Shown one piece after another: positions 18,230 to 62,057 of a stretch of DNA of 64,000 nt (position 1 is its first letter; each line of letters starts with the position of its first letter). Under the pieces are notes generated by a model. The model was not told where the DNA came from. It ran no database searches and worked only from the letters and a program-made list of their open reading frames with translations. Source of the stretch: Macrostomum lignano (Eukaryota). The position numbers were made by a program, and so were the translations under genes. The stretch lies in NCBI GenBank assembly GCA_002269645.1, contig NIVC01000046.1, positions 205,306-269,305 on the forward strand, written 5' to 3'.

Positions 18230-22900
<4,671 letters not shown>

Positions 22901-39000: not shown

Positions 39001-40951
39001 GGCTAAAGAATGCAATTGGACGTTCGACACCGTCGGATTGCAGTTGTCCAAGGCAAGCGCCTATTCGAATATCAGAGGCATCCGTGTCGAGGACAAACTT
39101 CACAGCAGGATCAGAATTAAATTCAGGCAGAGCGAGAACTTCAGTAGAACACAATTTCTTCTTCAGAGTGTCGAACGCTACCTGATGCTCGGGAGTCCAA
39201 TGCTGCCGCAGGCTGCCAATGTCCTTTCGCGTCAGGGCATGCAGCGGCGCAGCCACTCCAGCGTAGCCGTCGACAAACTTGTGGTAGTAATTGGCGAGGC
39301 CTAGGAATTGTCTCAGTTGAGTAACGGACTGTGGCACGGGCCAATCACGGATCTGCGCAATCTTGTCCTCACAGGTCTTCAGGCCGTCGGGAGTCACGAC
39401 GTGACCTAAATAATGCAGCTCCTTGAGGAACAATGACACTTCTTCGGCTTCACTTTGAGGTTTGCTGCGATGATGCGCTGGAGCACGGTCCGCAAATTAT
39501 CCAGCTGTTCCTCAAAGGTCACTGAGTGCACCACGATGTCGTCCATGTAGCCAAGCGCAGTCTTTGGCGTCAGGCGGTCCAGGAGCTTATTGATGCAACG
39601 CTGAAAGCTGCCGGGACTATCGTGGAGACCCATCGGTAGAACTTTAAAACAGAATTGGCCGCGGTCGATCACTGAGAATGCCGTCAAGTGCTGGTCGCAG
39701 TCGCGCAGCGGGATCTGCCAGAAACCTTGAGCAAGGTCCAAGCTAGAATACCACTGAGCACCACGAAGCTTCGCGAAGGTCTCTTGGATGTGCGGGAGCG
39801 GATACGGGTGATACACACACCTGTCGTTGAGAGCTCTGAAGTCGTGGACTAGTCGGATGTTGCCGTCCTTCTTGGGCACGATGAGCATTGGCGAATTGTA
39901 GCTCGAGTAGGCAGGGCGAATGATGTGCTTCGCCAGCATCTCGTCTAGCAGGGCGTCGAGCTTGTCCTTCAGATGAGGCGGGATTCTGCGCGGTGGTAGC
40001 GCAACTGGTGTCCGATCTTTCAGGACGATCTCGTGGGTCACCAGGTGAGTCAGGCCGGCGTCTAGCAGGTGCTTGGAGAAGGCCGCTTGACATTCAACTA
40101 GTAGATCTCGCACTCGCTGATGTTGTTCTTTGGACAATTCGCTGTTGATCTCGACTTCATCTAGCCATGCTATGCTTGACTCTTCAGGACTCTTCGACAG
40201 CTGTCGCACTTCAGGTTCGGGCGTCTCGCTCAAGTACATCAGGTCGGCAGTTCGGAGTGGCGTCGCAACACCAACACGGATACCGGCCTGCAGGAACACC
40301 TCGCTGTCGGCGGTGTTGACGACCTCAATGTAGCCGCGACCTTCAGGCATCGTCATCAGAGCAGGCGCTGCTTCCAGAGCGTTGCAGCTGGGATGCAGCC
40401 TCGACTTAACCAGCTCGACAATTGATGGCGATCCTCGATTCTCAGGGTGGCCGTCATCCAGTCTGACGGCAAGCAGCGCTGAACTTCTAGGCGGCAGGGT
40501 GCACTTCTCGGAGGTGTACACTCGGCGGGTCTGAAGCTCACGGCGCGAATAACGAACGGGGATGCACGTGCCGTTGTTGAACGTCAGCATTCCTTGAGCG
40601 AAGTCCAAGTTCTGGCAGTGCTCTCGCATAAACGATACGCCAAGCAATTTTTCACAATCGGAGACCGTCCGCGACGACATCACCGAACTCCACCGGAATG
40701 GTCACCTTACAAGCAAGTGGGAGCTGCGTCCCATCATACATAGTTACGCAATCGGGAATAGCATGCGATATAATACAACGAGGCATCCGACGTCTAATAG
40801 CGGCCCAGGTTGACGAACCAAGAAAGTTTTTCCGGCTGCCGCTGTCTAGCAAGAAAGGGACCTCTCGACTCGCAACTCGACCTGTGACGTACGGATCGGC
40901 CTCACGCGCATGGATTTTTTGATTCGGGAGGTGTCCACGAAACCTCCGCAC
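35659..40951 (-). CDS. pol: Gypsy pol (protease, RT, RNase H, long linker, integrase), broken by ~4 frameshifts
   Basis: FLLDSGS (PR); LDLAQGFWQ, LPMGL, YMDD (RT); LDTDAS...KKELLAI (RH); H-H-C-C zinc finger, HCDVVGP, HTDQGTNF, GQVENLNK (IN). Confidence 0.95.
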
Positions 40952-40961
40952 TCCGCGTCAC

Positions 40962-42217
40962 TTACTGGCGAGTGACTGTCGGACTGGGCATTGGCGCCTG
41001 CACAGCCGACATCCTCTTCTTCTGGTGACCTCTCGGAGTCTGCCAAGTAACCTGGGCTTGGACCTCGCGGAGGGCGGTGCCGTTGTCGCTCTCCGCCTGG
41101 CCGTTTCCCTGGTTCTGGCGCATCGGGCACTGGGTGTTGCGATGACCGGGCTGTCCGCAGCTATAGCAGATTATAGCTCTCTTCGGCGGACTGGCTATCT
41201 GCTGTTGGTCACGCTGCACCAGGTGATCAAGCAGTCGCTGCTGCTTCTCGATCAAGTCGGTTAGAGTTAGCAAGGCTTGGGCGGTGACGTCGGGCTTCGG
41301 GTCGCCGTCCTGCTCCCCGTCCAACATCCTAACCGGGGGTTGAGCGGTTCGCTGCGCCAATTCTTTGGCGCCTTCTAGTCGTCGTAGTTCTCGAATCGCA
41401 GCAAGAAGATTATTTGGGCGAACCCAGTACAGCCGTTCACGCAGATCTGGAGTCCGGATGCCAGCAAGAAATTGATCAGCGATCTCCTTCTCGCGGTCTT
41501 CAGGATGCATTCGAGGATACGCACGTTCACCAAGAGTTCTCAGGGCGTCAGCAAACTCTTCTGCTGACTCATTCTTGCCTTGTTGACGACGCCTCAACAG
41601 CTCTCTGTACTCATCAGCACCACCATGACGGGCAAATCGCTCAATCAGACGCTGCTTGACCTCCTCGTAGCTGGCAAAACGCGGAAGATTCATACCAAGC
41701 AAGGCAGGATACGCAGTCGCTAAGTCAAGACTCGCGATGAGGTGTTGTTCATCTCGAACGGGTCGACGATGCGCTCCATCTCGCAACGCTGCTCGAACGC
41801 GGCAAGCCAGACATGAATGTCCTGACTTGGAGTAAATTTCACAGTTTTAACTTGTTTACTCACGGGCCGCTCCATCTGCTGCTGCAGAGCTGCCATCATG
41901 GTCCTCACGTCCTGGTGCGTGATGTTCCGGCCGATGTTGTCCAGGCCTTGCAGAAGCTCGTCTGGCGGGTCGTCGGACACGTCGCTTCTGGCACCTCGCC
42001 TCGGCGTCGGCTGCTGACCAAAGTCGTTGATCGCTGCTGCTGCTGCGGCGTCCGCTGCCGCAGGCCTCGAACTGCTGATGTGCTGATCCAGCCGGCTGCT
42101 GCACCGGCTCTCGTCTCGCTCGTTGAACATGTTGAACTCGTCGTAGTCGCTGGCCGATGTCGTTCTCGAAAGAGCGGTTGGCTTGGGTGTGTCGTAGTCG
42201 GATCCCACCGCTGCCAC
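40962..42217 (-). CDS. gag: Gypsy gag with CCHC zinc knuckle (one internal frameshift ~41780)
   Basis: CYSCGQPGHRNTQC; capsid-like LRRRQQGKNESAEEFADAL. Confidence 0.9.
41103..41109 (-). promoter_or_regulatory. Putative -1 ribosomal frameshift slippery site G GGA AAC
   Basis: Correct phase in gag. The -1 frame is open downstream to 40846. A GCGGAG/CTCCGC stem follows. Confidence 0.65.
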
Positions 42218-42219
42218 CA
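42202..42219 (-). other. Primer-binding site complementary to tRNA-Leu(AAG/TAG) 3' end
   Basis: Plus strand ATCCCACCGCTGCCACCA equals the canonical eukaryotic tRNA-Leu 3' end plus CCA, 1 nt from the LTR. Confidence 0.9.
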
Positions 42220-42220
42220 G

Positions 42221-43298
42221 TGAAATAGATGCTGATTTCTTCCCGGATTAGGCCCTTGTGGATTACCTTAAATCTCGAGCCTCTTCAGAGGGAAGTTCTC
42301 TTAAATCTCTCAGTAGCGTAGGTAGTGCTGCCACCAGTTCCTTCAGGTCTCAGCCTTCGGTGAGGTGAGCTTCCCGTCGAACAAAATAATGAAGTCAACA
42401 AACACAGCACTGCGTGCAGATTTAGAGCGCAACGAATAGGGCGTCTTGTCAGCAGTACCTGCCAGGCTAGGATGGTAGAGGGAGGGCTGAGTTAGCCTCT
42501 CATAGACTTGGGTTGACTTGGTCGGGTTTCAGTCGGAGCAATAGGAATAGAATCGATATGCGCAAAGGCTTGGACACTTGGGATTTAGTTACACGCAGAC
42601 GTAGAACTCGAGGTTGAACAGAAAGAAGCCTCCTTGACGGAAACAAGGGGAGAGAGCTCTTATTTATAGCTGGGAAACTCCCGCGCTCAAGACCTCGTGA
42701 CTTGTTCTATTTTTAGAACTGACGTCACTCGAGAATCTCGGGCAGGGTACAAGCGCACGGAAGACCTCGTGACTTGTTCTATTTTTAGAAATGACGTCAC
42801 TCGAGAATCTCGGGCAGGGTACAAGCGCACGGAAGACCTCGTGACTTGTTCTATTTTTAGAACTGACGTCACTTGAGGGTCCCCCGGCAGAGTGCACATG
42901 GCTGTGACTTAGTTGCTATTTTTAGCAACATGAGTCACTCCTCTCCTTAGAAAAGGGAGGGGTCCGAAAGCATGTGACTCATCCGGTAAACAGGGCCAGC
43001 AAGTGCAGTAAACATGTTTACTGCACTTTGAGACTCAGAGAACGCAGAAACTGTCATGTGACCAGCTCACAAGACAGGGAGACAAAGACTGACGAAACAA
43101 GGACAGCCCGCAACAGAGAAGTTGCGGGCTGAGAAACGCAGGGCAACACGGGCAGAAGAAAGGGAGGGGCAGCAACAGACAGCCAAGAGGAGGAAGCGGG
43201 AAGCTGCCCAGCGGCAGACAGCAACCCAGGGCAAGGGCGAGGGCAAGGGCAACTGCTAACAAAGTGGGACGCCTAACATTAACTAGCGGATCACTACA
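42221..43298 (-). repeat. 5' LTR (1078 bp)
   Basis: Direct repeat of 33259-34340. Confidence 0.97.
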
Positions 43299-43302
43299 CT
43301 GC

Positions 43303-45078: not shown

Positions 45079-48000
45079 ATGCCGCTGCCAGCCTCATCAC
45101 TGAGCCTGCTGCTCTTGTCTCCCAGGAGACTAGCAATCCCAGCCTCCATCTGTTGCTATCGCCAATTTCAAACAAGCCAATCGCTGAATAAAAACAGCGG
45201 CAAGCCCCGATTGAAAACCATCCCAGTGTCCAACGCTTCTCAACGAGTTGCCCGCGGCTCCGCGGCCGCCTCAGCTCAGGCTCTGCTCAACCTCACGCCT
45301 GAGGCTTTGAAGAAGAAAATTGAAGAGCGCAACGCGGCTGAGGCTGCCGATCCCAGACGGGGTCGCCAGCCGGAAGCGGAGTGCCACCTCCGCGACCTGT
45401 TCGAGCCGAGACGCCTGCCATTGGTGGAGATTCTACGAAGGCATCGAGAGTTTGCCTGTCCAGAGATGCTGGACAATCCGAGCGGTCAGCTGTATGCCAC
45501 TTGCTTGTTCGACATGACCTCTGTTAAGCAGGGCAAGTTTATGGCTCCGTTCTCTAAGGTGAGATACTGTTAGAGATCCCTATATTATCTTCATCTTCAT
45601 AGATTTAAGAGTGAGTTGTAGCCTAGTGAGAAGAGCCTCGGACTCACGACTGGAAGATCTTGGACTGGAAGTCCTTGGACTGAACAGCCGTAGGCAGCCT
45701 TTAGATGCGCCGCGCAATAGCTGCGGCTGAGCTGTCGGTTGCACATCTAGCTATTGGGGTAGATGTAATCAATTATTATTATTATTTGTGTCGTCGTGAC
45801 TCAGCACGACAATTTTGGCATCCTGATTTTTTGTGTTTTTTTCCAAGCTGGATACGTACGGTTAAAGATGCTGGTGTTTTATTTGATTTTGAGCTTTTTG
45901 ACTGACGTCAGCTAACAATCCTTAGTTTGGACCTTGGATGCCAAGCAATGCTGTGGTTCTGACGCTTAAAAGTTCAAGAAAGATCTAAAGATTTACATCT
46001 CTTAAGGTTGAGATTTAGACTCTTAAATCAATGTCCATCGGTGAGATTTAGGGGCCCTTAAGAGGTAGTAGGCTATACAAAGCCGGTTGGTATTTAAACA
46101 AAAGATAATTTGAATATCGATTTTTAAGATCGATTTTTATGTTGTAACTTTAAGTTCGAACTTCAAGATCACCTGGCGTTGCCTCAGGTGCTTGCAGCCG
46201 CCCCTGAAATTATTATAGAATTTTCCAAGCGATTTAATCCTCAGTGGGAAAATCAAGCTATTGAAGACTTGTTTTTCATTGTCTATGGCCCAAAAGGGGG
46301 TCTACGGAGCAGCCAATTTGAGAATCTGGGCGCGCAATTAATCCTTTCCTTAGTACTCGTATATCCTTCACGAATAACTTCATTGAAATAACGTCTGCAA
46401 ATGGATGTCATATCAAGAAACGATTTAACGTTAACACTTTGATTTTAGAAAAACAATCAAAACAGGCAAAGGCAAAACCATGCCATACAGTATAAGCCGA
46501 AAACAATCGTGTCTCTCAAAACAGTGTTGGACAGATTGAAATCAAACCCGATCAATGTTCAGAGAATTTCTTCCTCGTTTAAACAGCGTGGTATGAAGCG
46601 AAGCATCTGCCAAAACCAGCCACCGCATTTGGCTATTGTAATTTCATAGCGACGCCTGATCGAATACACTGTTTTTCTCTTTACGTCCAGCCATCGCGAA
46701 ATGTGCTCAGCACTACCACGATGGCAGCGACAATGAGGTCGTACTTTTCGTTGCTTATCTTGCGATAGGGTTCTCGCCCTGCAGGATTCTGCTCATCCAT
46801 CGCATCTTGTGCTGTAGCAAAACTTTCGTCACTGCTTTGCTCGCTAAATTCTTCGTTTGCCATATCTATGTCTAATGGAATCTGTTATTCTCTATGGTCT
46901 AAGGCTTGCACAACTGTTAAAAGGATTAATAGCGCGCCCAAATTCTCGAATTGGCTGCTCCGTAGACCCCCTTTCGGGCCATAGACAATGAAAAACAAGT
47001 CTTCAACAGGTTGATTTTCCCACTAAGGATTAAATCGCTTGCTCCTAGGCCTTAATTGGCTTAGAAAATGCTATACCCGATGCGCCACATACCAGGGAAC
47101 ACTAGTAAAAACTGACAAAGCATGGCGTACTTCAGAATATGTTTAAGACAGCGACTTGAAACTGCAGTATATTTGACTTTAGCATATTGCTGTACTTTAC
47201 TCAAAATATGAACCACCAGCCTCAATCACTTTGCTCAGGCGACCTCTGAATGCAGCACATGTGCGCTGAACAAAGACTCGGGGCATTGCATGCCACTCCC
47301 GCTGAACAGAGCGCCGCAGAGCTGCGACATTCGAATGACGCTTAGCACAGGCCCTGGCCTTCAGACGCGGCCATATGCCGTAGTCAAGGGGCGAGAGATC
47401 TGGTGAGTGCGCAGGCCACAAATCCTTCGGCCAGAAGTCAGGGGCCTCTGAGCTCAGGAACTCCTGGGTCAGGCGGGCAGTGTGTGCTGGTGCTCCATCC
47501 TGCTGCCAGATCCACGCATCGCCGAACGTTTGCCGAGCCCACGGGAAGATGTGCTGACGCAGGATGTCCACGTACTTGGCAGCATTGAGGCGTTCTCCAC
47601 GATCGAGGAAAATTGGTGGAGCAACTTGGCCATCGCTAGCCACCACACCAAGGAGCTGCAGGCCACCGCAGTACTTGGTCTTTTCGACAGCCTTGACGCT
47701 CCAGCTGACCATCTTGGAACTCTTAGCGATGTACCTGGAGTTCTCTGGGCCCAGGAACTCGTCCAGGTGAAGTGGAGTCTCGTCGCTGAACAACACGACG
47801 GTGTCAGGCCTCTTCGACTTCAGACGCGACAGCAAAGCTCTCGCTCTTCGCTGACGCTCTTCAACAGCTCCTTCTGGAAGGTGGTGACGTACCTGCCGCT
47901 TGAAGCACTTTGCGCCAATGTCTTCGTGAACGAGTCGACGCATTGTTGTCGCCGAAACACCACTCTGGGCTGCCAGACTGCGAAGAGATCTTCTTGCATT

Positions 48001-51000
48001 GGACGCTATCTTCCGCTTCACTGATGTGATCAGCGTCTTCGTCCTTGCAGTCTTTGTCCGCTTACGGGAAACCTTCACATCGCCAGTTGCTTCCCACAGA
48101 CGTTTTGTGGCGTAAACAGTCTTTCTGGTGACTCCAAGACACTTTGAGATTTGAGTTGGTGTGCTTCCGCGTTTGAGCAACTCAACTACAGCACGACGCT
48201 TGTGCTCCATTGGGAAATTACAACTGATTAGAGGGCCACAAGCAAGAGACAAGTGATTGAAAATGAAGCTTAGAAAATTTAGAACATTTAAATATGTTCC
48301 TTTTTTCGTTTTTCGGTTTCAGTGCGTTAATAACGTCAGTCTAAAAAAGTGTTCCTTGGTATCTGGCGCACCGGGTATTACTATTTGTTTTGACAATCAA
48401 TATGAGAAAATGGACAATCAAAATGAAAACAGCCGTAGATCTGCATGCAGCAGCTCAGCTCAGCTTCGCAGCAGCTGCGGCTTAGGCCATAGACTTTTTG
48501 ACGATCGAAATGAAAATTGGACAATCAAAATGGCAACGGGAGCAGTGTGCGCGTTTATTTGAATGAAATTTTAACAATAGAAACGAGAAATTGACAACAG
48601 AAATGGCAACACAGTCAGAAAAATGATGGAAACACAGCAGTCCAGCAGCATAGGTTCAGAACTCCTGCCCAGCAAGGCAGCGTTCAAGCTGACGGAAGTA
48701 GCGCAATTCCCACGCAGCTGCCTTGTCCGGAGTCACGGCTTCAGGCAATGGCTCACGCGCCACTCTCTCCAGCAGCATGTAACGCCACTCTTCCTGGTTC
48801 ACGCCTTCTGGGGCAACTGCCTCTTCCCCAACGATGTCAGGCTGCGCCAGTCTGCTTTTGATCTTGGCCTTGAGGCAACTGTTGGCGAATTCCGAAGGGT
48901 TCAGAAAAGGTGAATATCCCGGAAGAATGCGGATGGACACAGCGTGCTGCAAACTGGAGAGATGGCTGAGAAAGATGGCTGGCTAATGCTTAAATGTGCT
49001 GCCTCGCTAAACTAACCGCGCGTTGCCATTTTGATTGTCCAATTCTCATTTCGATCGTCAAAAAGTCTATGGCCTAAGCCGCAGCTGCTGCGAAGCTGAG
49101 CTGAGCTGCTGCATGCAGATCTACGGCTGTTTTCATTTTGATTGTCCATTTTCTCATATTGATTGTCAAAACCAAACCAAATATTATCATTAAATCTGCC
49201 ATATTGCCGCAGGTGATCCGGCTTCCCCACGCTCTCCCGGAGTCCTTGGTCCGCCAGCACACGGTCATCGCTTTCTGCTCATCGCCCGAGCTAGCCGAAG
49301 ATCTCAAAGCCAAAGGCGCTATGGATGCTGGCGGAGCCGACCTGCTTGGCAAACTGGAGACTGGCGTCTACATTCAAGAGAACTTTGATTACGTCATCTG
49401 TCATCCAGACTTTTGGCCCAGTCTGTTGAAAGCTAGAAAACTATTGAAGGACGCGATGCCTGCCCAGAAATCGCCTCAGATATCTGAAGATATGGAGTCT
49501 GCTTTGATGCTGTACAAGTAGGTTAATAATCGCTTCTGTGTGTTCTTAAATTTTGAAGTAGTCACCCGTTACAAAAGTATATGCCAAGGCTTTAGTTACA
49601 ATATATACTTGATTTGTAACCAAAAGGAACAGAAATAAGTAAATTAATTATTTTTTCTAGGGGTACATCAATGCAATATTTTTGTTATTCGGGACCAAAG
49701 CGATATACGATATTATACAAATCTCAAGCTTTTTCTCAAGTTTTATAAGAACGTATTAAATAATATTTAACATTACTTGTCTGAGGTTAACAGAGCATTT
49801 TCAAAACTCAAGTTCCACTTTACGATTTTGATTTCTAACTCATTAGAAATTAGCTAAATTAGCTCTGCTGACTTAATATAAGAATTTTTGTTTTAATATT
49901 CACAACCTGCTACTTACAGTAAACCGTACATCGATACTACGAGTATCAACGAAACCCACTGGCTACCAGGGAGTTCTGTGTTTGGGAAGGTGGAAATCAA
50001 TTGTATCAGCACTCTCTGGCCCAGGTGCTTGGCAGATGCCTCAAGGACCGAATTAGGCACTGTGTTGATAGTTTTTACTGGCAATAATTACTGTGCAACT
50101 TGCACAGAAAACGGCACAGAAGTCTGCGCCGTTGAGGTGGTTGTCGTTCGGGTACAGCTTGGTACATGCAGGCGGCCTTCATGGTGTAGTTCAGGCTTCG
50201 GAAGTTTTACTCGTTGCAGTCCAGTACGCAAGCAGAGTGTTTTCTTGTCCCGCAGTGACCGTCGTAGCATCTCCACAGCTCTCGGAACAACTGCTCGTGG
50301 TGTCCTCCACCAGAAAGTGGCCACGCAGCCGATAGCACCCCCCTCCTCGGCTACGTTCCTTGCCGGATAGGCACAAGTTTAACCACTTCTGAGACTCTTT
50401 AAGACGAGTTTTTCGTGGGCAATGATGTGCTTTTTTAATTCAGTTAAAAGATCATGGCAAGGAAAGAATTAAAAAAAATATTTATTTAAAAAAATGGACT
50501 TAAATTCAACTAATAAATGAATATTTTATTCAGTTTGTAGTACTACTTTTTATAGAGCGGACCTACTAGGTTTTTGAATAGTAAATACGTTGAAAATCAT
50601 ACAGAATTACTTCTGATTTTGCTCCCAACCAGGACAGAATTAACTTCACTTTGCTCCCAACTACAAAAATATACGCCACAAAAAAGTAACGAGTCATTAA
50701 GTACATAAATATTTAATACTTTTTGAGGTAGAATATTTATTCCATTGTATTTAATTGTATTTAAAAAGAAATAGCAGAGAGAACAAAACATACAAAAGCG
50801 CGATGGTAGACGCAAAATAAGAAATAGATTCAAAATTTAAACACAAAAAAGTAATGCAAAATAAAGATAATTAAGTCACAACAAAGATAATATTCGATTC
50901 GAATGGTCTTTAATATTTAGATTGTCAAAAGTTGATCAAGATGCTCGGGTGGCGCCATGTATTTCGCGGCAATAAGTTGTTCTGCCACAAATCTGTACTC

Positions 51001-54000
51001 GACGGTGACTTTTGAGCTGTTGTCTCTCATCTTGGCCAGGGATAAGTCTGTCAACAGCCGGAACTTTCTTATCCAGCCGAGGCTTGATGTTCGGCCAAAA
51101 AACTAAACATAAAGGGAGGCTTCACGACGAAAGGATTTCCCTTTGGTGGAAAGCAGACCATAGCTGGCCGCCATGAAATGGCACTATTGCCTTTAGCCAG
51201 AAGGCGAACACTAGTTTTACAGCCATGGTTTGCTTGCTCGTAGCAGAAGAGGCGATGCGGTCGTGCCGTTTCGCCGTAGAAACGGCTGCCACTGCGGTAG
51301 AGGCAGCCGAAGCGTGCTGTTTTGCCGTCGCCCTGGAAGCGGCGGCCGGGGTCTCTTTCTGGTCACTCTCCGGCTTTCTTCAACTGCTGCGGCTGCGGCC
51401 GCTCGGATATTCTCGGCAGCCTCGGCAGCTCACTGTTGGTCCTCTTTTGTGAGCCCTTAATTGAGCAACAATTCACTGCGCTCTTCGTAGTCAGCGACTG
51501 CCACGTCGTCGGTATTTAACGCAGAAGCTGGTACAGCCGGATTCCTTCTAACGTTTTTTTTCATATGAAATGGTTTGTCGGTAGGTAGGTATGTGGGTAT
51601 GTGATCGTTTTAAGTCTAAAAATGAGTATGCGATTACAATCTGTCATTTTTGGCAGATTAAAAAGGGGCAGAGAACAGGCGCATACATGCACGACCTTGG
51701 GAATTACTCGGCCGTTTCTATTGGCAACACACGCATGTAAGTCGCTATTGGCTGAGAGCAGTCACGTGACTACTATTCCGTCCACTAGCGACTTACGTGT
51801 GTGTGTTGCCAATGGAAACGGCCGGGTGAATCCCTAGGTTGCGCCCAAGCATGAACAGGCGGACAAAGGGGGGTAAAGGGGATGGGAGGCTCCCCAACAG
51901 CAGACAGCGACCTGGGGCGAGGGCGAGGGAAGCTGCCGACAGTAGGGCGACGCCTAACACAAAACTAGCGACTTATTACAATATTATTACTAACTCATTT
52001 TTGAAAATTAGCTAAATTAGCTCTGCTGACGGTACTGTATAAAAATTTTTGTTCCAATATCCACTACCTGCTACTGACAGTAAATCGTATATGAATACTA
52101 TCAAACAAACCCACGGGCTGCCAAACGGTTCTGTGTGTTTGGGAAGGCGGAAATCAATTGTATCAGCACTCTCTGGCCCAGAGGCTTGGCAGATGCCTCA
52201 AGGGCGAATCAGGCACTGTGTTGATATTCTCGGTTTTTACTGGCAATAATTACTGTGCACCCTTGCGCAGAGGTGGTTGTCGTTCAGGTACAACCTGGTA
52301 CATGCAGGCGGCCCTGAACACGGTCTTCAGGGTGTAGTTCAGGCTTCGGAAGTTTTACTCGTTGCAGTCCAGTACGCCAGCAAAGTGTCTGGCAAGCAGT
52401 TTCCTTGTCCCGCAGTGACCGTCGTAGCGTCTGCACAGCTCTCGGACTAATTGCTCGTGGTGACAACCACCACAAAGTGGCCACGCAGCCGATAGAACCC
52501 CCCTCAGCAGCGTTCCTTGCCGGAAAGAAAGCATACATTTTTTTAAAAAAATTGTCTAAAATTTAACTAAAAATGAACACTTTATGAAGTTTGTAATACT
52601 ACTTTTTAGAGCGGATGTACTAGCTTTTTTTAGTAGTAAATACGTTGAAAATCGGACAGAATTACCTTCACCAAAACAAAAGTAATGCACAATAAAGATA
52701 ATTAAGTCACAACAAATATAATATTCGATTCGAATAGTCTTTATTATTTAGATTGTCAAAAGTTGATCAAGATGCTCGGTTGGCGCCATGCTTTTCGCAG
52801 CAATGGGTTGTTATTCCGCCGCAAATCTGTACTCGACGGTGACTTTTGAGCTATTGTCTCTTATCGTGGCCAGCGATGAGTCTGTTGTTCGGTTGAAAAA
52901 ACTGAGCAGGAAAGGAGTCTCCACGACGAAAGGATTTGTCCTTTGGTGGAAAGCAGACCATGGCTGGCCACTATGAAATGGCACTATTGCCTTCAGGCCA
53001 GAAAGCGAACACTAGTGTTACAGCCATGGTTTGCTTGCTCGTAGCAGAAGAGGCGACGGGGGCGTGCTGTTTCGCTGTCGCCGTGGAAGCGGCAGCCGGG
53101 GCGGGGGCGGTAGAGGTGCTTTCGCGGGAGCCTGGCAATCAGTTCCGTCCGGAAGCTCCGGCTGAACGAGTTCGGAGTTCGCGGCGAGCCAGTCAGGCAG
53201 CCCTCTCGATTAGGGCCTGGCAGTCACCATCGGCCAAGCCTCGGAGACGGCCCTAGTGCGGCCATTCGACGAAGTCTGGCCAGTCACCGTGCTGGTTGGC
53301 CAGGTCTTATTACTGCCGGGTGAACAGTCCCGTCCTCGAGCAGATATTGTCGACTGGGTTCGACGGCGGGGTCCTGGCTAAAGAACTGCTCTGATACAGT
53401 CGTGTGCTTCAGAAAAATTTAGAAAAAATGATACTAAGCAGATCAAGGAATGACACGAAATCGACAGATGACCTAGATGACCTAGCATTTAATTGGCAAA
53501 ATGAAGAATAAAAAGACGGCAAAAACACCAACACAAGATAAAATACAAAATTAAGCATCCAAGTAAAAAAATTATAACCAGCATGAAAAATATACGTAAT
53601 GTTTATAATGTTCTTTAAATCTATATAAACCGATAACAGCTTCACAATTTTTTTAAGATAAAGGCGCTTTTCTTATTAAGAAAAGACATTTCTTATTACT
53701 ATAAGTACAGCAAAGCTAGAAATGAAAAAAGGGTAGCAAAGCGTGGTGCGGGGACTTCAAATTAGGATTTTAAAGATTCAAAACATTTTCTGTGGAAAAA
53801 GTTAACAGAGTATACAGCTAGAGCTGTTTAATGACGTGAATTTGTTTATTGAAGATAGTTAAAGTCACTTCAATAGTTTATTACATATAAGCACTGCTGC
53901 ACGCAGACTCTGACGTCTCATCTATGTCCAGCCTCGGTCGCTTCTGTCGTCTTTTTGCAGCATGCTGTTTTTTCGAGCCTAGCTTTGGCTGACACTCGGC

Positions 54001-57000
54001 AAATTCTCGTTCTTTGCGCCATGTGCAGAAGCGCTGGAATCAATCATGCTGAGACGCTTAAAAGCAGTTCGCGGAACTCTTGCAGCTGAAATAGAGCTGG
54101 CAGCTGCTGGGCCAGAATCACCTACGCCAGCACTCCTTCTATAAGGAGATAATAATATTTAAAATGCACATTTATTCAACTCACTAAATCTGAAACGTGC
54201 TCAGATGACTGGTACTGCGCAAAAATCGCATAATCAGCACAGCAGCTAATGGGCCAGAAGGTTGATGTTGGTCTCTGGCTTCAGGATTCATCAGTGCAAG
54301 CAGCCGCTACAATTTAGAAGCGACTCCGTTCATCTGATCAGTTAAGTGACTCTGATGATCCTCAAGGCGGCTGCACCTTATAGCCAGTTCACTAAGAGTT
54401 GTAAGCTAAACAAATAAAATGCCTCGAAGAGAGTCCAGTGGGACATCCACAACTGCCTGGAATTGCTCCCCTATTTTTTTTGCAGCTGGTCTGAGCGGGT
54501 ATGCCGGCTCTGGAGCAACAACAGCCGCAGTGGCGACTTTCTCTGCCACAGCGGCTCTGCTCAGCGTTGGCTTTGGTGTTGGCATTTTGTCGCTGAGCGC
54601 GACAGTTGAAGCCCTTTCCACTGCCACTGAGGTCTTAGGTATAGTAGAATCATTGGTAGCTAAAGCATCTAACGCAGGAGCAGCCGCTGGCGTCGCTGGA
54701 TCATTCACCGACGTCGCAGGACTCGCAGGTGCAGCCTTCTGAATCTTGGTCAATGGCGTCGGATATTTGTTACTCGGTAGTGGCAACAACTGATTTTTAG
54801 TGTCCGGTAAAACTGTGTCCGAGAGCAAAAAGCGGAATTGTGGTTCTCCTCGAAATCGGCTGTCTGCTCAGAGTAGAAGCCGTCTGTGTATGAGGCTGAA
54901 GCCAGTTGCGCATGCTGTGGTTGTAATAACAAAATAGACGTAAAACTTACTTACTTACTCTTACTCGTAGACGTAAAACCTTAGGGTTACTTGGATTTCG
55001 AAAACATCTCAAATCAAACTCTTGCTCCACTTACTCGTAATTTAGATTGGTACGCACGGCGCACCTGTAGAACGTCAAATTAGGTTAAAACTCTTGGCTG
55101 CACGAGATTGAGAATCAGTGAGGTGCAAGGTGGCGTGATCAGTGTACGCACTGATTAAAAAAAACTTGAAGTGGGGCAGACTGGAAAGGTTGAGGCTGGG
55201 TGCGAGAGAAAAAAGGCACGATTACACAAGTACAAATTGTACGTTAAAATCGATTAAAATCAGTAGGGTTTTAATTAGACAGTGAATTAAATAAAAAACC
55301 GGTAGGTTTAAGATGCCTTAAGGCGAATCAGGTGCTTGACAATGGGTACTGGTAATGCTTGCTGTGCACCGTAAGTGGAAAATGGCTCAGAAGTCTGCGC
55401 CCTTGAGGTGGTTGTCATTCAGGTACTAGTACATGCATGCAGCCCTGACTACGGCCTTCGGGGTGTGGCTTCAGAAGTTAGACTTTGCAGTCCAGTTCGC
55501 GGCAGAGCTTCTGACAAGCAGTTTCCTTGTCCTGCAGTGAACGTCGTAGAAGTTCAAGTAGCTTCGGCGCTTTGAGCCTCATAGGCTTCCATTCTCGTCC
55601 TGTATGGGAGCATACAAGTCGGCCGAGTTGACAGTGATGTATGCCTCTTCTGTGGGTTTCTGCCTAGCCCGGCTGGCGATAGGATCCGGCAGTGTGTGGT
55701 TCACAATGTGCAGACCCCACTTTTCGTGGTGACGCTTGCCGTACGCTGGATGTTATTTGGGTGTGCGCGTCGCTGCCTACTCGCGGAATGCGCGCATAGC
55801 GCTCTTTTTCAGAAGATACACGGCTGATGCGAAATTAGCAGCTTTGTCCACTATCATGTGACTATCATTTGGCACCTCTCCCTTGAGGCAATTAGGTATA
55901 CGTGTACTAGTGATCTCAATCAGGTTCTCAATCAGTGATTATTGTGTCGTATGCAATTTGAAAGCTCGGCTGGTATGGCAGGGTTCCACTGGCATTCGTG
56001 CAGGATGTGCTCAGAAACAGCGGCCGATGCTTCAGAGAAGTAGATCTCGAAGGCCCGTTTGAATTCAGGAGCCTTGGCCCCTCGCTTCAGTGCACGAGCC
56101 AAGGCCAAGTCACGACCGTGTGAAGACACTCTAGCAACTGCCGCGCCGCGTAGAAGTTAAAAATGCTGCGGGTCTGTTACTCTGTTCATGGAGGCTGGTG
56201 ATTCTGCGGCTAAACTTACAATCCGCTTTGGCATACACCTTCATTGGGACCATAACGTCGCTCCCGTCTACGAAGTGGCGGTTTAGGTAGATGAAGTTTA
56301 TGCCGCTGTAGATGGTTTTTGACACCTCCACTGCGTAGTCCGACCTTGCGTAGACGTCGACAGTGGCCTGTAGAATGGGTCAGTCACCCGTTGCGCCTCT
56401 GCTTTTGACCGCAGGAGTGGAACGGCTAGGAGCGCAAAGTCTATCATACACAGGGCTAGTGCATTCTCCTGCGGCAGGAGAAGGCCCTTGTCTTTGGCAG
56501 TCCGGACTATGTAGCTTAGCATGTTTGCGTGGTACATTGTGTCACATGTCGGTGTCCAGCCCTGGAAGGTGCTATAGTTCTGTTTACTAGCCATGCTTGG
56601 TAATATTGAGAGTGATGTCGCGCCAGAACCTTTCCAGGTCCCAGCCAGAGCCGAGCTTTGTTATACATGGTTGATCCCCCGATTGTGGGACAGAATCACT
56701 TAGCAGTCTGCAACCAAGTCACACAACAGTATGACAGTGTATCTGCAGGTGGGTACCGGGTCGAAACCGGCAGGCGGCACGTAGTCTTGTCCTCGAGAGC
56801 TGCGTGAACGCTGCTATCTCGTGGAACGTCCGCTCCATGAACTCTGGCGTCCTGGTCCTCTTTATGCTGGAGGCTCACTGGTGCAGATGGTGATCAGTCT
56901 GGGTGTTCAGCTCACGAGTGATATCGTCGTGACTGAAAGTCTCCCTGGCCTTGTCTTCCGGCTTCGTGTTCTCTGCTTTAGCAGCCATTAGAGCGATGTT

Positions 57001-59072
57001 GAGCTTGCCAAGACGGTGGCCGATGTCTGCTGCGGGCTGTATCTGTTATATTGTGCACTTCTTAGATAGGATGTTTCCGTACGTCAGGCAATAGTTCAGC
57101 TCGCACCAAACTTCTCGGGGTAGCACTTGGATTTTTGAGAGGTTAGAATAGGCGTCAGTGTCTGCCAGGGCAGGCGTCACATCCTGGTAGGTCTCGGCCC
57201 AATTGCTCGTGTCCTCCACCAAAAAGTTGCCACGCAGCCGATAGCGCCCCCACTCGGCTGCGTCTGGCAACATCAGCTTTGAGACTAAGTCGTAGCCTTT
57301 GTTTGTCTCGTAAGATTGGTAGTCCGTGGGCAGTGACATGTGCTAGGCTCGGCATCTGCACATATCACATAAAGCACACAAGCTCCTTAGGTTTTTAGAA
57401 CATTTTGGCCATCGTCTTGTCGAACATTACCTCTGGGTCGATGTCTGGCGCAGGAAACACAAACACGTAGAATATGTAGGCCAAGTCAAGCTTTTCGCGG
57501 TCGGACAGGTCTAGCTAGCTGGGCCTGTTCGGGCGCCATGTAGAAATATAGCATTGAATTATTTGATACACTTGGATTAAAATTAATTAATTGGAATTGG
57601 AAGGAACAGTGAGTAGCACGGGGTCTAAACGAGTGTATTTATAATACACTAAAGGAAAAAAGAAGTTGAGCGCGCAATGGAGGAATGAGGTGAGATTGAA
57701 GAGCCAATTAGAAAACAGCAAGTGATAGATAAAGTTCTGAAGTGGACTGAAGAGTGGAACTTAGCTTTCCTTGTCCTTGTAAGTAATATTAATGGATAGT
57801 AAAATAAAATATCCATCCTAAAAACTAAAAAACTTAAAGATTAAAAGTGAGCAATAACTTGTATGCTTTAAAAATTGTCTATAAAATAATAATTTAATTT
57901 ACCAAATTAGGTTAAACTGCCAAATGCCTACAAATGACCTTTTAAATTTCAAAAGTAAAGGATAAAAATACAATTGACAACAAATCTCGTACAGCCATGA
58001 ACTGTGCAACAAAGAGGCCATAATATAGCTGGGGGCTGCCACACCTAACCGAAGTTTTTCTGAAGCTTACACTGGTATAACCCCTTTATAGCTTAATAAA
58101 AAAGAAATTTAGTGTCATATAGAAATTTAGTATAGTTGAATTTGATGTAAATTATTGTATTAGGTCAAGAACCAAAGAGTAGAGACCTCTTGTTTAAGAG
58201 TCCAATACTCTAACCACCATGCTCTAGGCTAGGCCCACAAGTCCCTTAAATTTTATACACAGTATAGTAGACAATATATTGTGCGAATATTGCTATATAA
58301 TGCACAAATATGGCCTTATAATCCAGACATATGCCTAGCATAGTAAAATACTTGAAAGAAAATAATCTTACATTGATAAAAGTCTGATATTGTACCCTCA
58401 ATGCTGCGTAGAGCCATACTACTGCGTGACAGGTAGTGGTATGTTAAGGACATGTTTTCATATTGTATATTTTGTGTCTGCATTCGGCCATCCACAAAAA
58501 TCTTCCAGATAATCTATCTGCATTATCTATCCATTCCAATCGGTCAGTCATCTATTGGCAAACGCATAAATCATAATAAAACAAAGAGCGCTAACATATA
58601 CATGTTTCATAATTGACTTTTTCAACAGAAGTCAAAATGGAGGTTGCACTTTTGAAATTAATGGGAATTGGAACACTACTATCTAACATTTATCTCTAAT
58701 ATGAGGATTTATATATCTACAAGTTTTGAGCACTTTGTCATCCCACACCGCAGATATGGCATACCCGCTAAGCTGACCCAGGCCGGGGACCTGCCAGACC
58801 GAGCCCAGTGCCGCGTGCCCTTCGGTCTGCTGGACTGGCCCGACTACAACTTGAACGAGAACCTCTCAGCCATTGTAACCGGCCTGTTGAATGAGAAACC
58901 AAAGAAATCCAATCGTGAATTCATCATGTCAGTCTCGGTCGCGTGTCCTCCGTCTGACGAGCTGTTCCTACTGGATTGGAAACCGTACACCATTGCGGCA
59001 GATTCTTCAAGCACTGCTGCTCACACGGTAGCACCGGATACGGCTGATGCTGTTGCGGCTTCTGCTAGTTAA
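45079..59072 (+). CDS. MRPL1: Mitochondrial 39S ribosomal protein L1 (uL1m); exons 45079-45558, 49213-49517, 58754-59072 (~367 aa)
   Basis: Basic presequence. EILRRHREFACPEMLDNP, VIAF...GAMDAGGADL, FDYVICHPDF and GLLDW...ENLSAIV match uL1m. Phase 0 and phase 2 GT-AG introns close the frame. Confidence 0.88.
46226..47041. mobile_element. Non-autonomous inverted-repeat element (~120-bp arms) with IS630/Tc1-like N-terminal remnant
   Basis: 46226-46348 is inverted to 46920-47041. Internal minus frame GREPYRKISNEKYDLIVAA. Confidence 0.7.
47076..48375 (-). mobile_element. Full-length Tc1/mariner DD37D (maT) transposon, TA TSD
   Basis: 27-bp TIRs CCCG(A/G)TGCGCCA(C/G)ATACCA(G/A)GGAACAC with 3 mismatches, flanked by TA at 47074-47075 and 48376-48377. 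Confidence 0.92.
47197..48252 (-). CDS. Intact DD37D transposase (probable start MEHKRR)
   Basis: HTH N-terminus; FSDET, WQQDGAPAH and SPDLSPLDY with 37 residues between the 2nd and 3rd Asp. Confidence 0.93.
   Translation of the reverse strand: MSLACGPLISCNFPMEHKRRAVVELLKRGSTPTQISKCLGVTRKTVYATKRLWEATGDVKVSRKRTKTARTKTLITSVKRKIASNARRSLRSLAAQSGVSATTMRRLVHEDIGAKCFKRQVRHHLPEGAVEERQRRARALLSRLKSKRPDTVVLFSDETPLHLDEFLGPENSRYIAKSSKMVSWSVKAVEKTKYCGGLQLLGVVASDGQVAPPIFLDRGERLNAAKYVDILRQHIFPWARQTFGDAWIWQQDGAPAHTARLTQEFLSSEAPDFWPKDLWPAHSPDLSPLDYGIWPRLKARACAKRHSNVAALRRSVQREWHAMPRVFVQRTCAAFRGRLSKVIEAGGSYFE
48387..49172. mobile_element. Non-autonomous element with ~155-bp inverted arms and IS630/Tc1 (DDE_3) C-terminal remnant
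   Basis: 48387-48540 is inverted to 49020-49172. Internal LPGYSPFLNPSEF motif at 48656-48952 (-). Confidence 0.8.
49900..51540 (-). pseudogene. Endogenous viral element copy A (rearranged RdRp fragments)
   Basis: CTATCGGCTGCGTGGC.ACTTT and CTACGACG.TCACTGC.GGACAAG are shared with 55320-57545. The minus strand also encodes VTVEYRFVAEQLIAAKYMAPPEHL. Confidence 0.7.
51566..51980 (-). mobile_element. Probable solo LTR related to the 33-43 kb Gypsy family
   Basis: Starts TGAAAT and ends GACGCCTAACACAAAACTAGCGACTTATTACA, similar to the big LTR end. Internal ~45-bp hairpin. The TSD is not exact. Confidence 0.5.
51995..53410 (-). pseudogene. Endogenous viral element copy B (local duplicate of copy A, extends further 5')
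   Basis: 51995-53100 is colinear with 49835-51350, including AT-rich inserts. Confidence 0.7.
54406..54828 (-). pseudogene. Orphan Ala/Pro/Thr-rich ORF fragment, ends in ELM2-like KIGEQFQAVV
   Basis: 140-codon GC-rich ORF; the motif resemblance is weak. Confidence 0.25.
55320..57545 (-). pseudogene. Endogenous viral element: Qinviridae (Yingvirus)-like RNA-dependent RNA polymerase core, with stops and frameshifts
   Basis: Ordered motifs LDLAYIFY...PAPDIDP; ELNYCLTYGNILSKK; AAKAENTKPEDKARETFSHDDITREL; motif B FQGWTPTCDTMYH; motif C ALCMID(F); VSKTIYSGINFIYLNRHFVDGSDVMVPMKVYAK...RRITSLHEQ. Confidence 0.78.
58160..58236 (-). mobile_element. Degenerate tRNA-derived SINE head
   Basis: Minus strand GCATGGTGGTTAGAGTATTGGACTCTTAA...GGTTC gives an A-box-like and weak B-box-like pattern. 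CpG-eroded. Confidence 0.3.
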
Positions 59073-59149
59073 TCATTTACTTATAATGTAGTATGGATTT
59101 CACTGCTTTTAAAGGTTTTGTTAATGTACTTAGTTAATAAATTAAAATC

Positions 59150-59710
59150 TCAGGTGAGATTTGAGAATAGACTCAGATAGATCTCGCAATTGAGATTTGA
59201 GAATTGAATCAGATAAATCTCAGGTGAGATTTGAGAGTAGTCTCAGATAAATCTCACTGTTAAGATCTCACTGTTGAGATTTGAGAATAGACCTAGATTA
59301 ATCTCAGTTGAGATTTGAGAACAGACTCAAATTAATCTCAGTTGAGATTTGAGAATAGACTCAGATAAATCTCGCAGTTGAGATTTGAGAATAGACTCAG
59401 ATAAGTCTCAGGTGAGATTTGAGAATAGACTTAGATTAATCTTAGTTGAGATTTGAGAATAGACTTAGATTAATCTTAGTTGAGATTTGAGAATAGACTC
59501 AGATAAATCTCGCAGTTAAGCTTTGAGAAGAGACTCAGATTAATCTTAGTTGAGATTTGAGAATAGACTCAGATAAATCTCGCAGTTAAGCTTTGAGAAC
59601 AGACTCAGATTAATCTCAGGTGAGATTTGAGAATAGACTCAGATAAGTCTCAGGTGAGATTTGAGAATGAACTCGGATAAATCTCAGGTGAGATTTAAGA
59701 ATAGACTTTG
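59150..59710. repeat. 33-35-bp tandem array with self-complementary unit ends
   Basis: TGAGATTTGAGAATAGACTCAGATAAATCTCAGG, about 16 copies. Confidence 0.92.
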
Positions 59711-60096
59711 ATAAATAAACTCGTACAATTAGCTCAATAAACTCAGCAACATATTAAGATTGTCCACTAATTTGCAATGAAACAGAGTCTGTTTTTTCAA
59801 GTGAGCATTTCTCATGCGCTTCAATACAAAAGTGAATTTGTCCGCATCAAAGCCATTGGCGATGGAAGTTGTTATAATGTTTCTATTTCTTTATTGGCCA
59901 GTCACCTACCAGCTAAAAGTATTTATTGAGCATCGTTGTTTGTGTCTGTAAATTAAAACAATAATACGTTTTTCCTGGATAATTCAAATTAGACTACTCA
60001 TACTTCGAGTAAATTAGTAGGGTAGTGAGCTTTTAGCGTAATTTTTAAACAAGTTAGAAAACAGCATCAAGAATCTATAAAATTTCCAGCTTGTCT

Positions 60097-60727: not shown

Positions 60728-62057
60728 AGATCGCGGTCATAGTCCTGGTGCTACTTGATGCAATAATTGTGGTCGCTGAGTTGGCCATCGATCTCGGCCT
60801 GCTCAGCTCCTCCGGTCGCGAGGGCCACGAGTCCAGCGCCTGGCCCCACGTACTGCACTCGTTGAGTCTGACAATTCTAAGTCTGTTTCTACTAGAAGCA
60901 ATGCTGAAATTGTACGCTATGGGTTGGAAAATTTTCCACCACAAGATGGAACTGTTCGATATGTTTGTCATTGTGGTGTCCTTCGGTCTGGATGTGGCCA
61001 GCGCCGTGCCCGGGTCGCAGCTCACCGCCCTGTTCGGCCTGGTGGTGCTGCTCAGGCTGTGGCGTATTGTCCGCATTGTGAATAGTGAGCTAGAGTTCCT
61101 TGTTTAAGTGGGGGGGGGGAATTCTTTCTTTTTTAATCGCATAGTAGCCGCCTACACGACTCTCCTTAAAAGAATCGTCCTTAAAAAATCGCCCTTTTAA
61201 AGAGTCGACTTTATAAAAAATCGCCCCTATAAAAATCGCCCCTATAAAAATCGCCCCTATAAAAATCGCCTCTATTTAAATTGCCCTCCATAAAGAATCA
61301 CCCCATAAAGAATCACCCCTCAAAAGAATCGCCCCTCAAATAAATCGCCCTTCAAAGAATTGCCCTTCATAAAATCGCCCTTCAAAGAATCGCCATCAAA
61401 AGAATCGCCCCTCAAAAGAATCGCCCCTCAAAAGAATCGCCCCTCAAATAAATCGCCCTTCAAAGAATTGCCCTTCATAAAATCGCCCTTCAAAGAATCG
61501 CCATCAAAAGAATCGCCCCTCAAAAGAATCGCGCTTCAAAAGAATCGCCCCTCAAAAGAATCGCGCTTCAAAAGAATCGCCCCTCAAAAGAATCGCGCTT
61601 CAAAAGAATCGCCCCACAAAAGAATTGCTCCGCAAAAGAATTGCTCCGCAAAAGAATCGCCCCTCAAAAGAATCGCCCCACAAAATAATCGCCCTCAAAA
61701 AAATCGCCCCTCAAAGAATCGCCCTTTAAAGAATCGCCCCCCCCCAAAGAATCGCCCCAACCCGGCGCACCCGCAGGCATCGCCCTCTCCATCCGGCTGC
61801 AGGGCAAGAAGGCCCTGGTCAGGCAGTCGGAGCTGCTGGAAGCTGCCGAGAGTCGCTGTCAGGAACTCAATAATCGAATCGCTGAACTCAACGCTGGCCT
61901 TAGCGATGCTCTAGACCTGCTGCAGTCAGTCGGCAAGGATCCATCCATAGCATCGGGGCTTGTGGACGCTAAAAAGTTACAACAGTTGCAGGAACTGCTG
62001 GAGCTGACTGCTCCCGATGCTGAAACAGAAGTCTTGGGGCGAAATGACTGTGAATAA
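60097..62057 (+). CDS. HVCN1: Voltage-gated proton channel Hv1 (exons 60097-60351, 60730-61084, 61777-62057; 296 aa)
   Basis: S1 selectivity Asp (LLDAII), S3 ELFD and S4 LLRLWRIVRIVN. No pore domain. C-terminal coiled coil. Splice phases 0 and 1 are consistent. Confidence 0.93.
60405..60625. repeat. 32-bp degenerate tandem repeat (Hv1 intron 1)
   Basis: GTCTTTGTAGCTTAAATGGTGTCAGACTGTCA units. Confidence 0.8.
61150..61760. repeat. ~15-16-bp AAGAATCGCCCC array (Hv1 intron 2)
   Basis: About 38 units seen directly. Confidence 0.92.

What the first reader, a model, noticed from the sequence alone, without database searches (positions are those of the whole stretch)
55320..57545. Endogenised RdRp of a Qinviridae-like negative-strand RNA virus
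Stitching broken minus-strand frames gives, in order, PAPDIDP, ELNYCL.YG.ILS, pre-motif A AAKAENTKP..K.RET.S.DD..RE, motif B FQGWT.T.DT..H, motif C MID and the K-T..S..F.YLNR...G..V..PMK block. From recall, this set is characteristic of Qinviridae (Muvirales) L proteins, whose motif C is IDD. Motif A appears deleted and IDD reads IDF, so the copy is catalytically dead. A germline fossil of this poorly sampled virus family would be direct evidence of host range and age in a probable flatworm.
Basis: partly seen in the sequence, partly recalled or inferred. Interest (0 to 1): 0.9.

Follow-up and report, generated by a model that had tools for sequence, protein, structure and literature searches.

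The report
Decayed qinvirus polymerase fossil in genome
A roughly 2.2 kb stretch of this eukaryotic genome is a broken, non-functional copy of part of the polymerase (L) gene of a qinvirus-like negative-strand RNA virus, which shows that such a virus once entered this host's germ line.

Summary
On the minus strand of 55311-57545, pieces in three reading frames line up in the right order with positions ~360-1135 of the ~1800-aa L proteins of qin-like viruses. Six blocks are significant (E 3e-6 to 1e-19 against a five-L-protein profile). Nothing else in the 64 kb matches. In a search of 1.84 billion proteins, the only genuine hits to the motif B-C piece were qin-like L proteins, including the RdRp of Beihai sesarmid crab virus 4 (Qinviridae), plus three short fragments.

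At the motif C column, 16 of 19 relatives read IDD, the Qinviridae signature, and the window reads IDF. The copy is dead:
- at least 7 in-frame stops;
- at least 3 frameshifts (5 if a weak block counts);
- a net loss of ~114 codons;
- no recognisable motif A;
- both ends missing.

The motif A interval has normal length, so it decayed rather than being deleted. The stretch 49900-55300 holds only two ~300 bp internally deleted derivatives. The host could not be identified, so "flatworm" is untested. This is a new member of a known kind (a non-retroviral endogenous viral element) from a family with few documented hosts.

The parts
55311..57545 (-). Main endogenous viral element: a broken fragment of a qin-like L (RdRp) gene covering L positions ~357 to ~1135 (weakly to ~1160), truncated at both ends.
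   Evidence: tblastn with five L proteins. Profile search of six-frame fragments. Break counts. G+C island. The lower ~230 bp (55311 to ~55540) is included because it is shared with the two mini-copies; its viral origin is not shown.
56180..57010 (-). RdRp core domain within the element, from pre-motif A through motifs B, C (reads IDF), D and E. Motif A is not recognisable.
   Evidence: The strongest profile blocks lie here (E 1e-13, 7e-18, 1e-19). 49% identity over 45 aa to P0004 across motifs B-C. Motif C column. Motif A test.
50034..50356 (-). Mini-copy A: an internally deleted derivative of the element. It joins the piece matching L ~460-485 directly to the sequence that follows the main copy's last L block.
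   Evidence: blastn: 82.5% identity to 57189-57263 and 68.6% to 55311-55549. Alignment A1.
52238..52513 (-). Mini-copy B: the same structure as A, in the second unit of a ~2.15 kb tandem duplication (49820-51300 / 51976-53080).
   Evidence: blastn: 79.5% and 79.7% identity to the two ends of the main copy, and 78% between units A and B.

Best explanation
The stretch is a non-retroviral endogenous viral element. It is a DNA copy of about 45% of the L (RNA-dependent RNA polymerase) gene of a qinvirus-like, bisegmented negative-strand RNA virus, fixed in a eukaryotic chromosome and since decayed into a pseudogene.

**Shown:**
- collinear homology to qin-like L proteins, from upstream of the polymerase core to just beyond it;
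- the family's unusual Ile-Asp start of the motif C triplet;
- many stops and frameshifts, loss of motif A and of the second catalytic Asp, and truncation at both ends;
- a location among transposons and tandem repeats;
- two old, internally deleted paralogous copies 3-5 kb away.

**Inferred from established knowledge of such elements:** viral L mRNA was reverse-transcribed by a host retroelement enzyme in a germ-line cell and inserted. The locus was later partly duplicated, and all copies drifted neutrally. The three copies differ by ~20-30% at the DNA level, which suggests the integration is old.

It encodes no working protein. The only plausible present activity is as a source of small RNAs, which was not tested.
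For: - phmmer of the 120-aa motif B-C piece against 1.84e9 proteins: the genuine hits are L-sized proteins matched at residues ~680-760, E 7e-7 to 9e-4. One is the RdRp of Beihai sesarmid crab virus 4, YP_009330273.1.
- BLASTP to P0004: 49% identity over 45 aa across motifs B-C.
- tblastn of five L proteins: collinear matches from L ~357 to ~1146, only at 57514-55543 on the minus strand.
- Profile search: six significant blocks, E 3e-6 to 1e-19.
- The motif C column is IDD or MDD in all 19 relatives and IDF in the window. IDD is specific to Qinviridae-type RdRps (PMC10101049, PMC9927876).
- 38 of 46 family-invariant columns are kept.
- The block-wise NJ tree nests the element inside the IDD group.
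- Break counts.
- Flanks and neighbours are host-type repeats and transposons: Ty3/gypsy and Tc1/mariner.
- A G+C island coincides with the element.
- Paralogous mini-copies at 68-82% identity.
Against: - No curated family model recognises the pieces: Pfam found nothing and PDB sequences gave nothing.
- The word-indexed protein search found nothing.
- Identity to every relative is only ~31-34% over matched blocks.
- No named outgroup (Yueviridae, Chuviridae, Mononegavirales) was in the tree, so family-level placement is not fully secured.
- No integration junction signature was established. One 14-nt direct repeat brackets the locus but may be chance.
- The assembly and host could not be identified, so read-level support for the junctions is unknown.
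Confidence: 0.9

Rival explanations
1. The element derives from a related but distinct lineage of Haploviricotina, an unnamed sister group that also has Ile in motif C, rather than from Qinviridae proper.
For: - The element is about equally distant (31-34% identity, Kimura distance 1.1-1.4) from all IDD-type L proteins, with no close exogenous relative.
- Most comparators are unnamed metatranscriptome contigs.
- A virus with IDD falling between Qinviridae and Yueviridae has been described (PMC9927876).
Against: In the block-wise NJ tree rooted on the MDD group, the element falls between the Beihai sesarmid crab virus 4 clade and a second IDD clade. That places it inside the span of a recognised qinvirus. 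It is sister to the second clade in 149 of 200 resamplings.
Confidence: 0.2
2. The locus is not inert. It is retained as a template for small RNAs (piRNA or siRNA) against related viruses, as described for viral fossils in arthropods.
For: - It lies in a repeat-rich and transposon-rich stretch of the kind that often forms small-RNA clusters.
- piRNAs mapping to qin-like sequences were reported in a sea louse (PMC10287012).
- Three copies of the element are kept in the same orientation.
Against: - No expression data were available.
- The amount of decay is what neutral drift would give.
- The copies differ by 20-30%, which shows no sign of conservation.
- The host, and therefore its small-RNA pathways, are unknown.
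Confidence: 0.15
3. The similarity is chance, or the pieces belong to a host or transposon gene.
For: Pfam and PDB sequence searches of the pieces gave only noise. The top four phmmer hits were unrelated tandem-repeat proteins.
Against: - Six collinear blocks score E down to 1e-19 against an L profile.
- Hits to L proteins come out of 1.84e9 sequences.
- 38 of 46 invariant columns are kept.
- There is no reverse transcriptase, integrase or transposase signal in the pieces.
Confidence: 0.01
4. Viral cDNA or an exogenous virus contig was mis-assembled into the genome sequence.
For: The source assembly could not be inspected. None of the window proteins looked up is on record in the gene-position collection.
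Against: - The copy has at least 7 stops and at least 3 frameshifts and lacks both ends of the gene.
- Diverged, internally deleted paralogues lie 3-5 kb away inside a tandem duplication.
- An RNA virus leaves no DNA unless it is integrated.
Confidence: 0.02

Closest known systems
L protein (RdRp) of Beihai sesarmid crab virus 4, Qinviridae, genus Yingvirus (YP_009330273.1 = P0010; L segment = L003)
   Same: Collinear homology over L ~357-1135. The same conserved blocks are present: the PAPD-type block, pre-motif A, and motifs B, C, D and E. Ile-Asp begins the motif C triplet.
   Different: The window copy is chromosomal DNA covering only ~45% of the gene, and it is broken by stops, frameshifts and a deletion. 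Motif C reads IDF and motif A is unrecognisable. Identity is ~31% over matched blocks.
Qin-like fossil in a Trichuris genome (L001: GCA_964197005.1 / OZ077899.1; Trichuris muris UniRef A0A5S6R637 = P0012, annotated 'Reverse transcriptase domain-containing protein')
   Same: It is also a genome-embedded, frameshifted fragment of a qin-like L gene covering the polymerase core, and it sits next to host-type genes.
   Different: It lies in a different host and locus. It is only 31-58% identical to the window copy in the short matching blocks, so it is an independent integration. Its source names it as a reverse-transcriptase-domain protein, not as a viral fossil.
IDD-type RdRp-like element in the Bigelowiella natans genome (PMC9927876)
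   Same: It is a genome-integrated RdRp-like sequence with an IDD motif C, interpreted as an ancient endogenous viral element.
   Different: The host is a protist, detection was only by a generic RdRp profile, and no sequence was available here for comparison (not tested).
Endogenous fragments of L genes of other negative-strand RNA viruses in animal genomes (bornavirus-, rhabdovirus- and chuvirus-like elements; established knowledge)
   Same: The same kind of object with the same presumed origin: reverse transcription of viral mRNA by host retroelements, germ-line fixation and neutral decay.
   Different: They derive from a different virus class. The pieces do not match Pfam Mononeg_RNA_pol. 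The relatives match it only weakly, and their profile matches solved mononegaviral L structures only weakly.

Membership tests
Qinviridae-derived sequence (L gene) | Significant collinear homology to the L protein of a recognised qinvirus | tested here: met
   Beihai sesarmid crab virus 4 RdRp: phmmer E 6e-4 in 1.84e9 proteins for one 120-aa piece. tblastn gives collinear matches from L ~357 to 1127. The profile of five L proteins gives six blocks with E 3e-6 to 1e-19.
Qinviridae-derived sequence (L gene) | Ile in place of Gly/Ser at the first position of the motif C triplet (IDD, reported as unique to Qinviridae-type RdRps: PMC10101049, PMC9927876) | tested here: met
   At the aligned column, 16 of 19 relatives read IDD and 3 read MDD. 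The window reads I-D-F, so the diagnostic Ile and the first Asp are kept.
Qinviridae-derived sequence (L gene) | Phylogenetic placement inside Qinviridae relative to named outgroups (Yueviridae, Chuviridae, Mononegavirales) | tested here: inconclusive
   The block-wise NJ tree nests the element within the IDD group, between the BSCV4 clade and a second clade (149 of 200 resamplings). The tools yielded no named outgroup sequences, and most comparators are unnamed contigs.
Qinviridae-derived sequence (L gene) | Bisegmented genome with an S segment encoding a nucleocapsid protein (ICTV profile, PMC10721934) | not testable with these tools
   A fossil of one gene cannot show genome organisation. 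No qinvirus N protein was obtained as a comparator, so N-derived fossils in the window were not searched for.
Active viral RdRp | Intact open reading frame with catalytic motifs A and C | tested here: not met
   At least 7 in-frame stops, at least 3 frameshifts and a net loss of ~114 codons. Motif A is not recognisable. The second Asp of motif C is replaced by Phe. About 356 N-terminal and at least 570 C-terminal residues are absent.
Non-retroviral endogenous viral element | Virus-derived sequence contiguous with host-type DNA on both sides | tested here: met
   The element lies within a 64 kb eukaryotic window that also holds a Ty3/gypsy element, a Tc1/mariner-like gene, tandem arrays and AT-rich flanks.
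Non-retroviral endogenous viral element | Germ-line fixation: junction-spanning reads and an orthologous locus in related species | not testable with these tools
   The source assembly and species could not be identified. Diverged paralogous copies argue indirectly for long residence in the genome.
Mononegavirales L (Pfam PF00946) | Match to the Mononeg_RNA_pol model above its cut-off | tested here: not met
   None of the ten pieces matched, even at E <= 10. Full-length relatives match weakly: 31.6 bits for P0004, and 23.6 bits for P0013, below the cut-off of 27.

The most novel reading that the evidence does not exclude
The fossil, together with the unrecognised one in Trichuris, is direct genomic evidence that qin-like viruses infected germ-line cells of multicellular animals. 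That would mean they are not only viruses of the protists that live with those animals. If so, this locus extends the family's proven host range to a phylum where no qinvirus has been reported, and it gives a minimum age for the association. The internally deleted mini-copies could also descend from a deletion-type defective viral genome rather than from a later chromosomal deletion.
Probability: 0.4. Interest if true: 0.65.

Novelty: new member of a known kind. Interest (0 to 1): 0.5.

Why it matters
Qinviridae is known almost only from metatranscriptomes. Its virion and replication are unknown (PMC10721934), and the only confirmed hosts are two trypanosomatids (PMC11108086). A chromosomal fossil ties a qin-like virus to a definite host lineage and gives a lower bound on the age of that association.

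The full-text searches run here found no paper that describes a Qinviridae-derived fossil in an animal genome. There are only hints:
- an IDD-type element in Bigelowiella (PMC9927876);
- piRNAs mapping to qin-like sequences in a sea louse (PMC10287012).

The Trichuris case also shows that such fossils can sit in annotated genomes under misleading names, and may be counted as exogenous viruses in transcriptome surveys.

Tried and rejected
- **Pfam scan of ten pieces and PDB sequence search.** Only noise.
- **Word-indexed protein search with the 120-aa piece.** Nothing.
- **The same tool with the crab-virus L protein and with the five-L alignment.** Only three proteins each, so it gave no named outgroups, and all three searches are now used.
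- **Walking outwards in IMG/VR with a second alignment.** More IDD-type relatives only, because the search patterns are specific to this group.
- **The top four phmmer hits (P0001-3, P0006).** Checked and rejected as tandem-repeat proteins whose weak repeated matches add up.
- **Rfam and tRNA scans.** Nothing in the window.
- **'Viral sequence inserted into a host repeat'.** Considered because a ~330 bp repeat is split around 1.6 kb of the element. Rejected because L collinearity runs without a gap through the upstream repeat half and continues upstream of it. The short copies are therefore deletion derivatives.
- **Viral origin of the lower ~230 bp (55311 to ~55540).** The test scored no better than a reversed control.
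- **Motif A.** A sub-profile search gave only non-significant flanking matches.
- **Target-site duplication.** One 14-nt exact repeat brackets the locus, but a second repeat pair lies in the opposite order, so nothing is established.
- **Host identification.** Exact-protein look-ups of three window ORFs found no record, and a literature search for the Trichuris-like assembly accession found nothing.

Full report
**What is in the sequence.** The window is eukaryotic and rich in repeats. It holds a Ty3/gypsy LTR retrotransposon (33259-43300), a Tc1/mariner-like transposase gene (47197-48252), a long-TIR element and many tandem arrays. It has no Rfam family or tRNA.

A G+C island of 0.51-0.57 spans about 55400-57400, against 0.24-0.45 in the flanks.

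**Is it more than chance?** Curated libraries did not help:
- Pfam gave only noise for ten pieces.
- PDB sequences gave only noise.
- The word-indexed protein search of the 120-aa motif B-C piece found nothing.

An exhaustive phmmer search of that piece against 1.84 billion representative proteins found eleven hits.
- Four are tandem-repeat proteins whose weak repeated matches add up. I checked and rejected them.
- Four are proteins of 1671-1878 aa, all matched at residues ~680-760.
- Three are short fragments.

One of the long proteins is the RdRp of Beihai sesarmid crab virus 4 (YP_009330273.1), which the literature uses as a Qinviridae reference (PMC9927876). The other three come from ~5.6 kb contigs, the size of a qinvirus L segment (PMC10721934). 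BLASTP of the piece against P0004 gives 49% identity over 45 residues across motifs B and C.

**Extent and order.** tblastn of five full-length L proteins against the whole window gives matches only at 57514-55543 on the minus strand. They are strictly collinear, from L ~357 to ~1146.

A profile of the five proteins, searched against all 2008 six-frame fragments of the window, finds six significant blocks (E 3e-6 to 1e-19). These cover roughly L 360-400, 455-585, 685-820 and 1090-1135. Two further weak collinear blocks also appear. Nothing else in the window matches.

The window keeps 38 of 46 columns that are invariant across sixteen relatives.

**Which virus group.**
- IMG/VR yielded fourteen more relatives.
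- At the motif C column, 16 of 19 relatives read IDD and 3 read MDD. The window reads I-D-F.
- IDD is reported as unique to sequences matching the Qinviridae profile (PMC10101049; also PMC9927876).
- Identity over matched blocks is 31-34% to the IDD-type proteins and 22-24% to the MDD group and L011.
- Relatives share a median of 37% identity with each other over the same columns.

It places the element inside the IDD group, between the crab-virus clade and a second clade. It is sister to the second clade in 149 of 200 resamplings.

The L profile matches only mononegaviral L proteins among solved structures. Two relatives match Pfam Mononeg_RNA_pol weakly. Both results fit the ICTV description of the family (PMC10721934).

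No named outgroups could be obtained. 'Qinviridae-like' is therefore secure, but 'inside genus Yingvirus' is not.

**State of the gene.** Within the matched stretches there are:
- at least 7 in-frame stops;
- at least 3 frameshifts, or 5 if the weak block is accepted;
- one net loss of about 114 codons downstream of motif E.

About 356 N-terminal residues and at least 570 C-terminal residues of the L protein are absent. The second catalytic Asp of motif C is replaced by Phe.

Motif A cannot be recognised. The interval between pre-motif A and motif B nevertheless has normal length (103 codons for 101 positions), and it shows faint collinear matches on either side of where the motif should be. 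No working polymerase can be encoded.

**The neighbouring mini-copies.** A ~330 bp sequence occurs at 50034-50356 and at 52238-52513, inside the two units of a ~2.15 kb tandem duplication. It matches two separate parts of the main element:
- 57189-57263, at 80-83% identity;
- 55311-55549, at 69-80% identity.

I considered that viral sequence had been inserted into a host repeat. I rejected this because the L alignment runs without a gap through the upstream half and continues upstream of it. The short copies are therefore derivatives of the locus that have lost about 1.6 kb internally.

Whether the lower half (55311 to ~55540) is viral or flanking sequence cannot be decided. That part of L is poorly conserved, and the test did no better than a reversed control.

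The three copies differ by about 20-30%. The locus was therefore duplicated long ago and has drifted since (inference).

**How it got there, and what it does.**
- *Inferred, not shown.* As for other non-retroviral viral fossils, viral L mRNA was probably copied into DNA by a host retroelement enzyme and inserted in a germ-line cell. The window does hold a retrotransposon with reverse transcriptase. No chimeric junction, poly(A) tract or convincing target-site duplication was found. One 14-nt exact repeat brackets the locus but may be chance.
- *Present function.* Most likely none. Small-RNA production is a possible but untested rival.

**Comparison with what is known.**
- The closest named virus is Beihai sesarmid crab virus 4.
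- The closest object of the same kind found here is a frameshifted qin-like fragment in assembly GCA_964197005.1 (L001). It is ~87-100% identical to a Trichuris muris protein that UniRef names 'Reverse transcriptase domain-containing protein'.
- A second frameshifted qin-like fragment comes from a public sequencing run (L002).
- Both are only distantly related to the window copy, so these are independent events.
- The full-text searches run here found no paper describing a Qinviridae fossil in an animal genome. Related hints exist (PMC9927876, PMC10287012).
- Confirmed hosts of the family are so far two trypanosomatids (PMC11108086).

**What remains open.** The host species is unknown. Exact-protein look-ups of three window ORFs found no record, so 'flatworm' is untested. 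Read-level support for the junctions, orthologous loci, expression, and a tree with named outgroups are also missing.

**Verdict.** This is a real, ordinary-in-kind but taxonomically uncommon viral fossil: a new member of a known kind. Interest is moderate. It would be higher if the host proves to belong to a phylum with no known qinvirus.

**Note on method.** I compared the frame pieces only as they stand, block by block. Some tools print consensus lines on their own, and I did not reuse them. My early notes and the output contain coordinates of open stretches that I used to read the frames.

Noticed in passing
window 50034-50356 and 52238-52513 (within tandem units 49820-51300 / 51976-53080): Two ~300 bp internally deleted derivatives of the viral fossil lie in a ~2.15 kb tandem duplication, at 68-82% identity to the main copy. 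The deletion joins L ~485 to the sequence after the last L block, and a short stretch of similarity sits at the two deletion edges.
   Followed up: partly
window 55076-55089 and 57903-57916: An exact 14-nt direct repeat (CAAATTAGGTTAAA) brackets the fossil and ~600 bp of flank. It may be a target-site duplication or chance. A second, 13-nt pair lies in the opposite order.
   Followed up: no
L001 4139-5506 (GCA_964197005.1, OZ077899.1) and protein P0012: A frameshifted qin-like L fragment sits next to a Sushi-domain gene in what is probably a Trichuris genome. The matching Trichuris muris UniRef entry A0A5S6R637 is named 'Reverse transcriptase domain-containing protein'. A transcriptome survey lists two Qinviridae for T. 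muris (PMC11445058), and some of these could be transcripts of such fossils.
   Followed up: partly
L002 260-2777 (Logan SRR9875064 contig): A 2.8 kb contig carries a qin-like L homologue (L ~1-836) split over three frames. It is either another fossil transcript or an error-rich assembly.
   Followed up: no
L017 (IMG/VR UViG_2773857837_000001, 6585 nt): A qin-like L homologue reads in a single frame but with a few in-frame stops (9 in that frame, against 83-96 in the other two). Possible explanations are sequencing errors, read-through, an unusual genetic code or a fossil transcript.
   Followed up: no
window 33259-43300: A Ty3/gypsy LTR retrotransposon has 1.08 kb LTRs at 98.3% identity and long ORFs for gag (zinc knuckle), reverse transcriptase, RNase H and integrase. 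Its G+C of 0.57-0.61 is far above the ~0.45 of the surroundings. It is probably a young insertion.
   Followed up: partly
window 26226-30006: An element with 584 bp terminal inverted repeats at 99.8% identity holds ~176 bp internal tandem repeats and a 472-aa ORF (26831-28249, minus strand) with no Pfam match.
   Followed up: no
window 47197-48252 (minus), with inverted repeats 46226-46347/46920-47041 and 48384-48538/49021-49175: A Tc1/mariner-like transposase ORF (HTH plus DDE_3 domains) looks intact. Nearby inverted repeat pairs are 94-99% identical.
   Followed up: partly
window 16305-17094, 14615-15080, 17090-17657, 18497-19472, 20205-20869, 59145-59716, 61164-61758: Several tandem arrays are present. 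One has a 60 bp period with copies 100% identical over 790 bp (16305-17094), and long ORFs run through the arrays on both strands.
   Followed up: no
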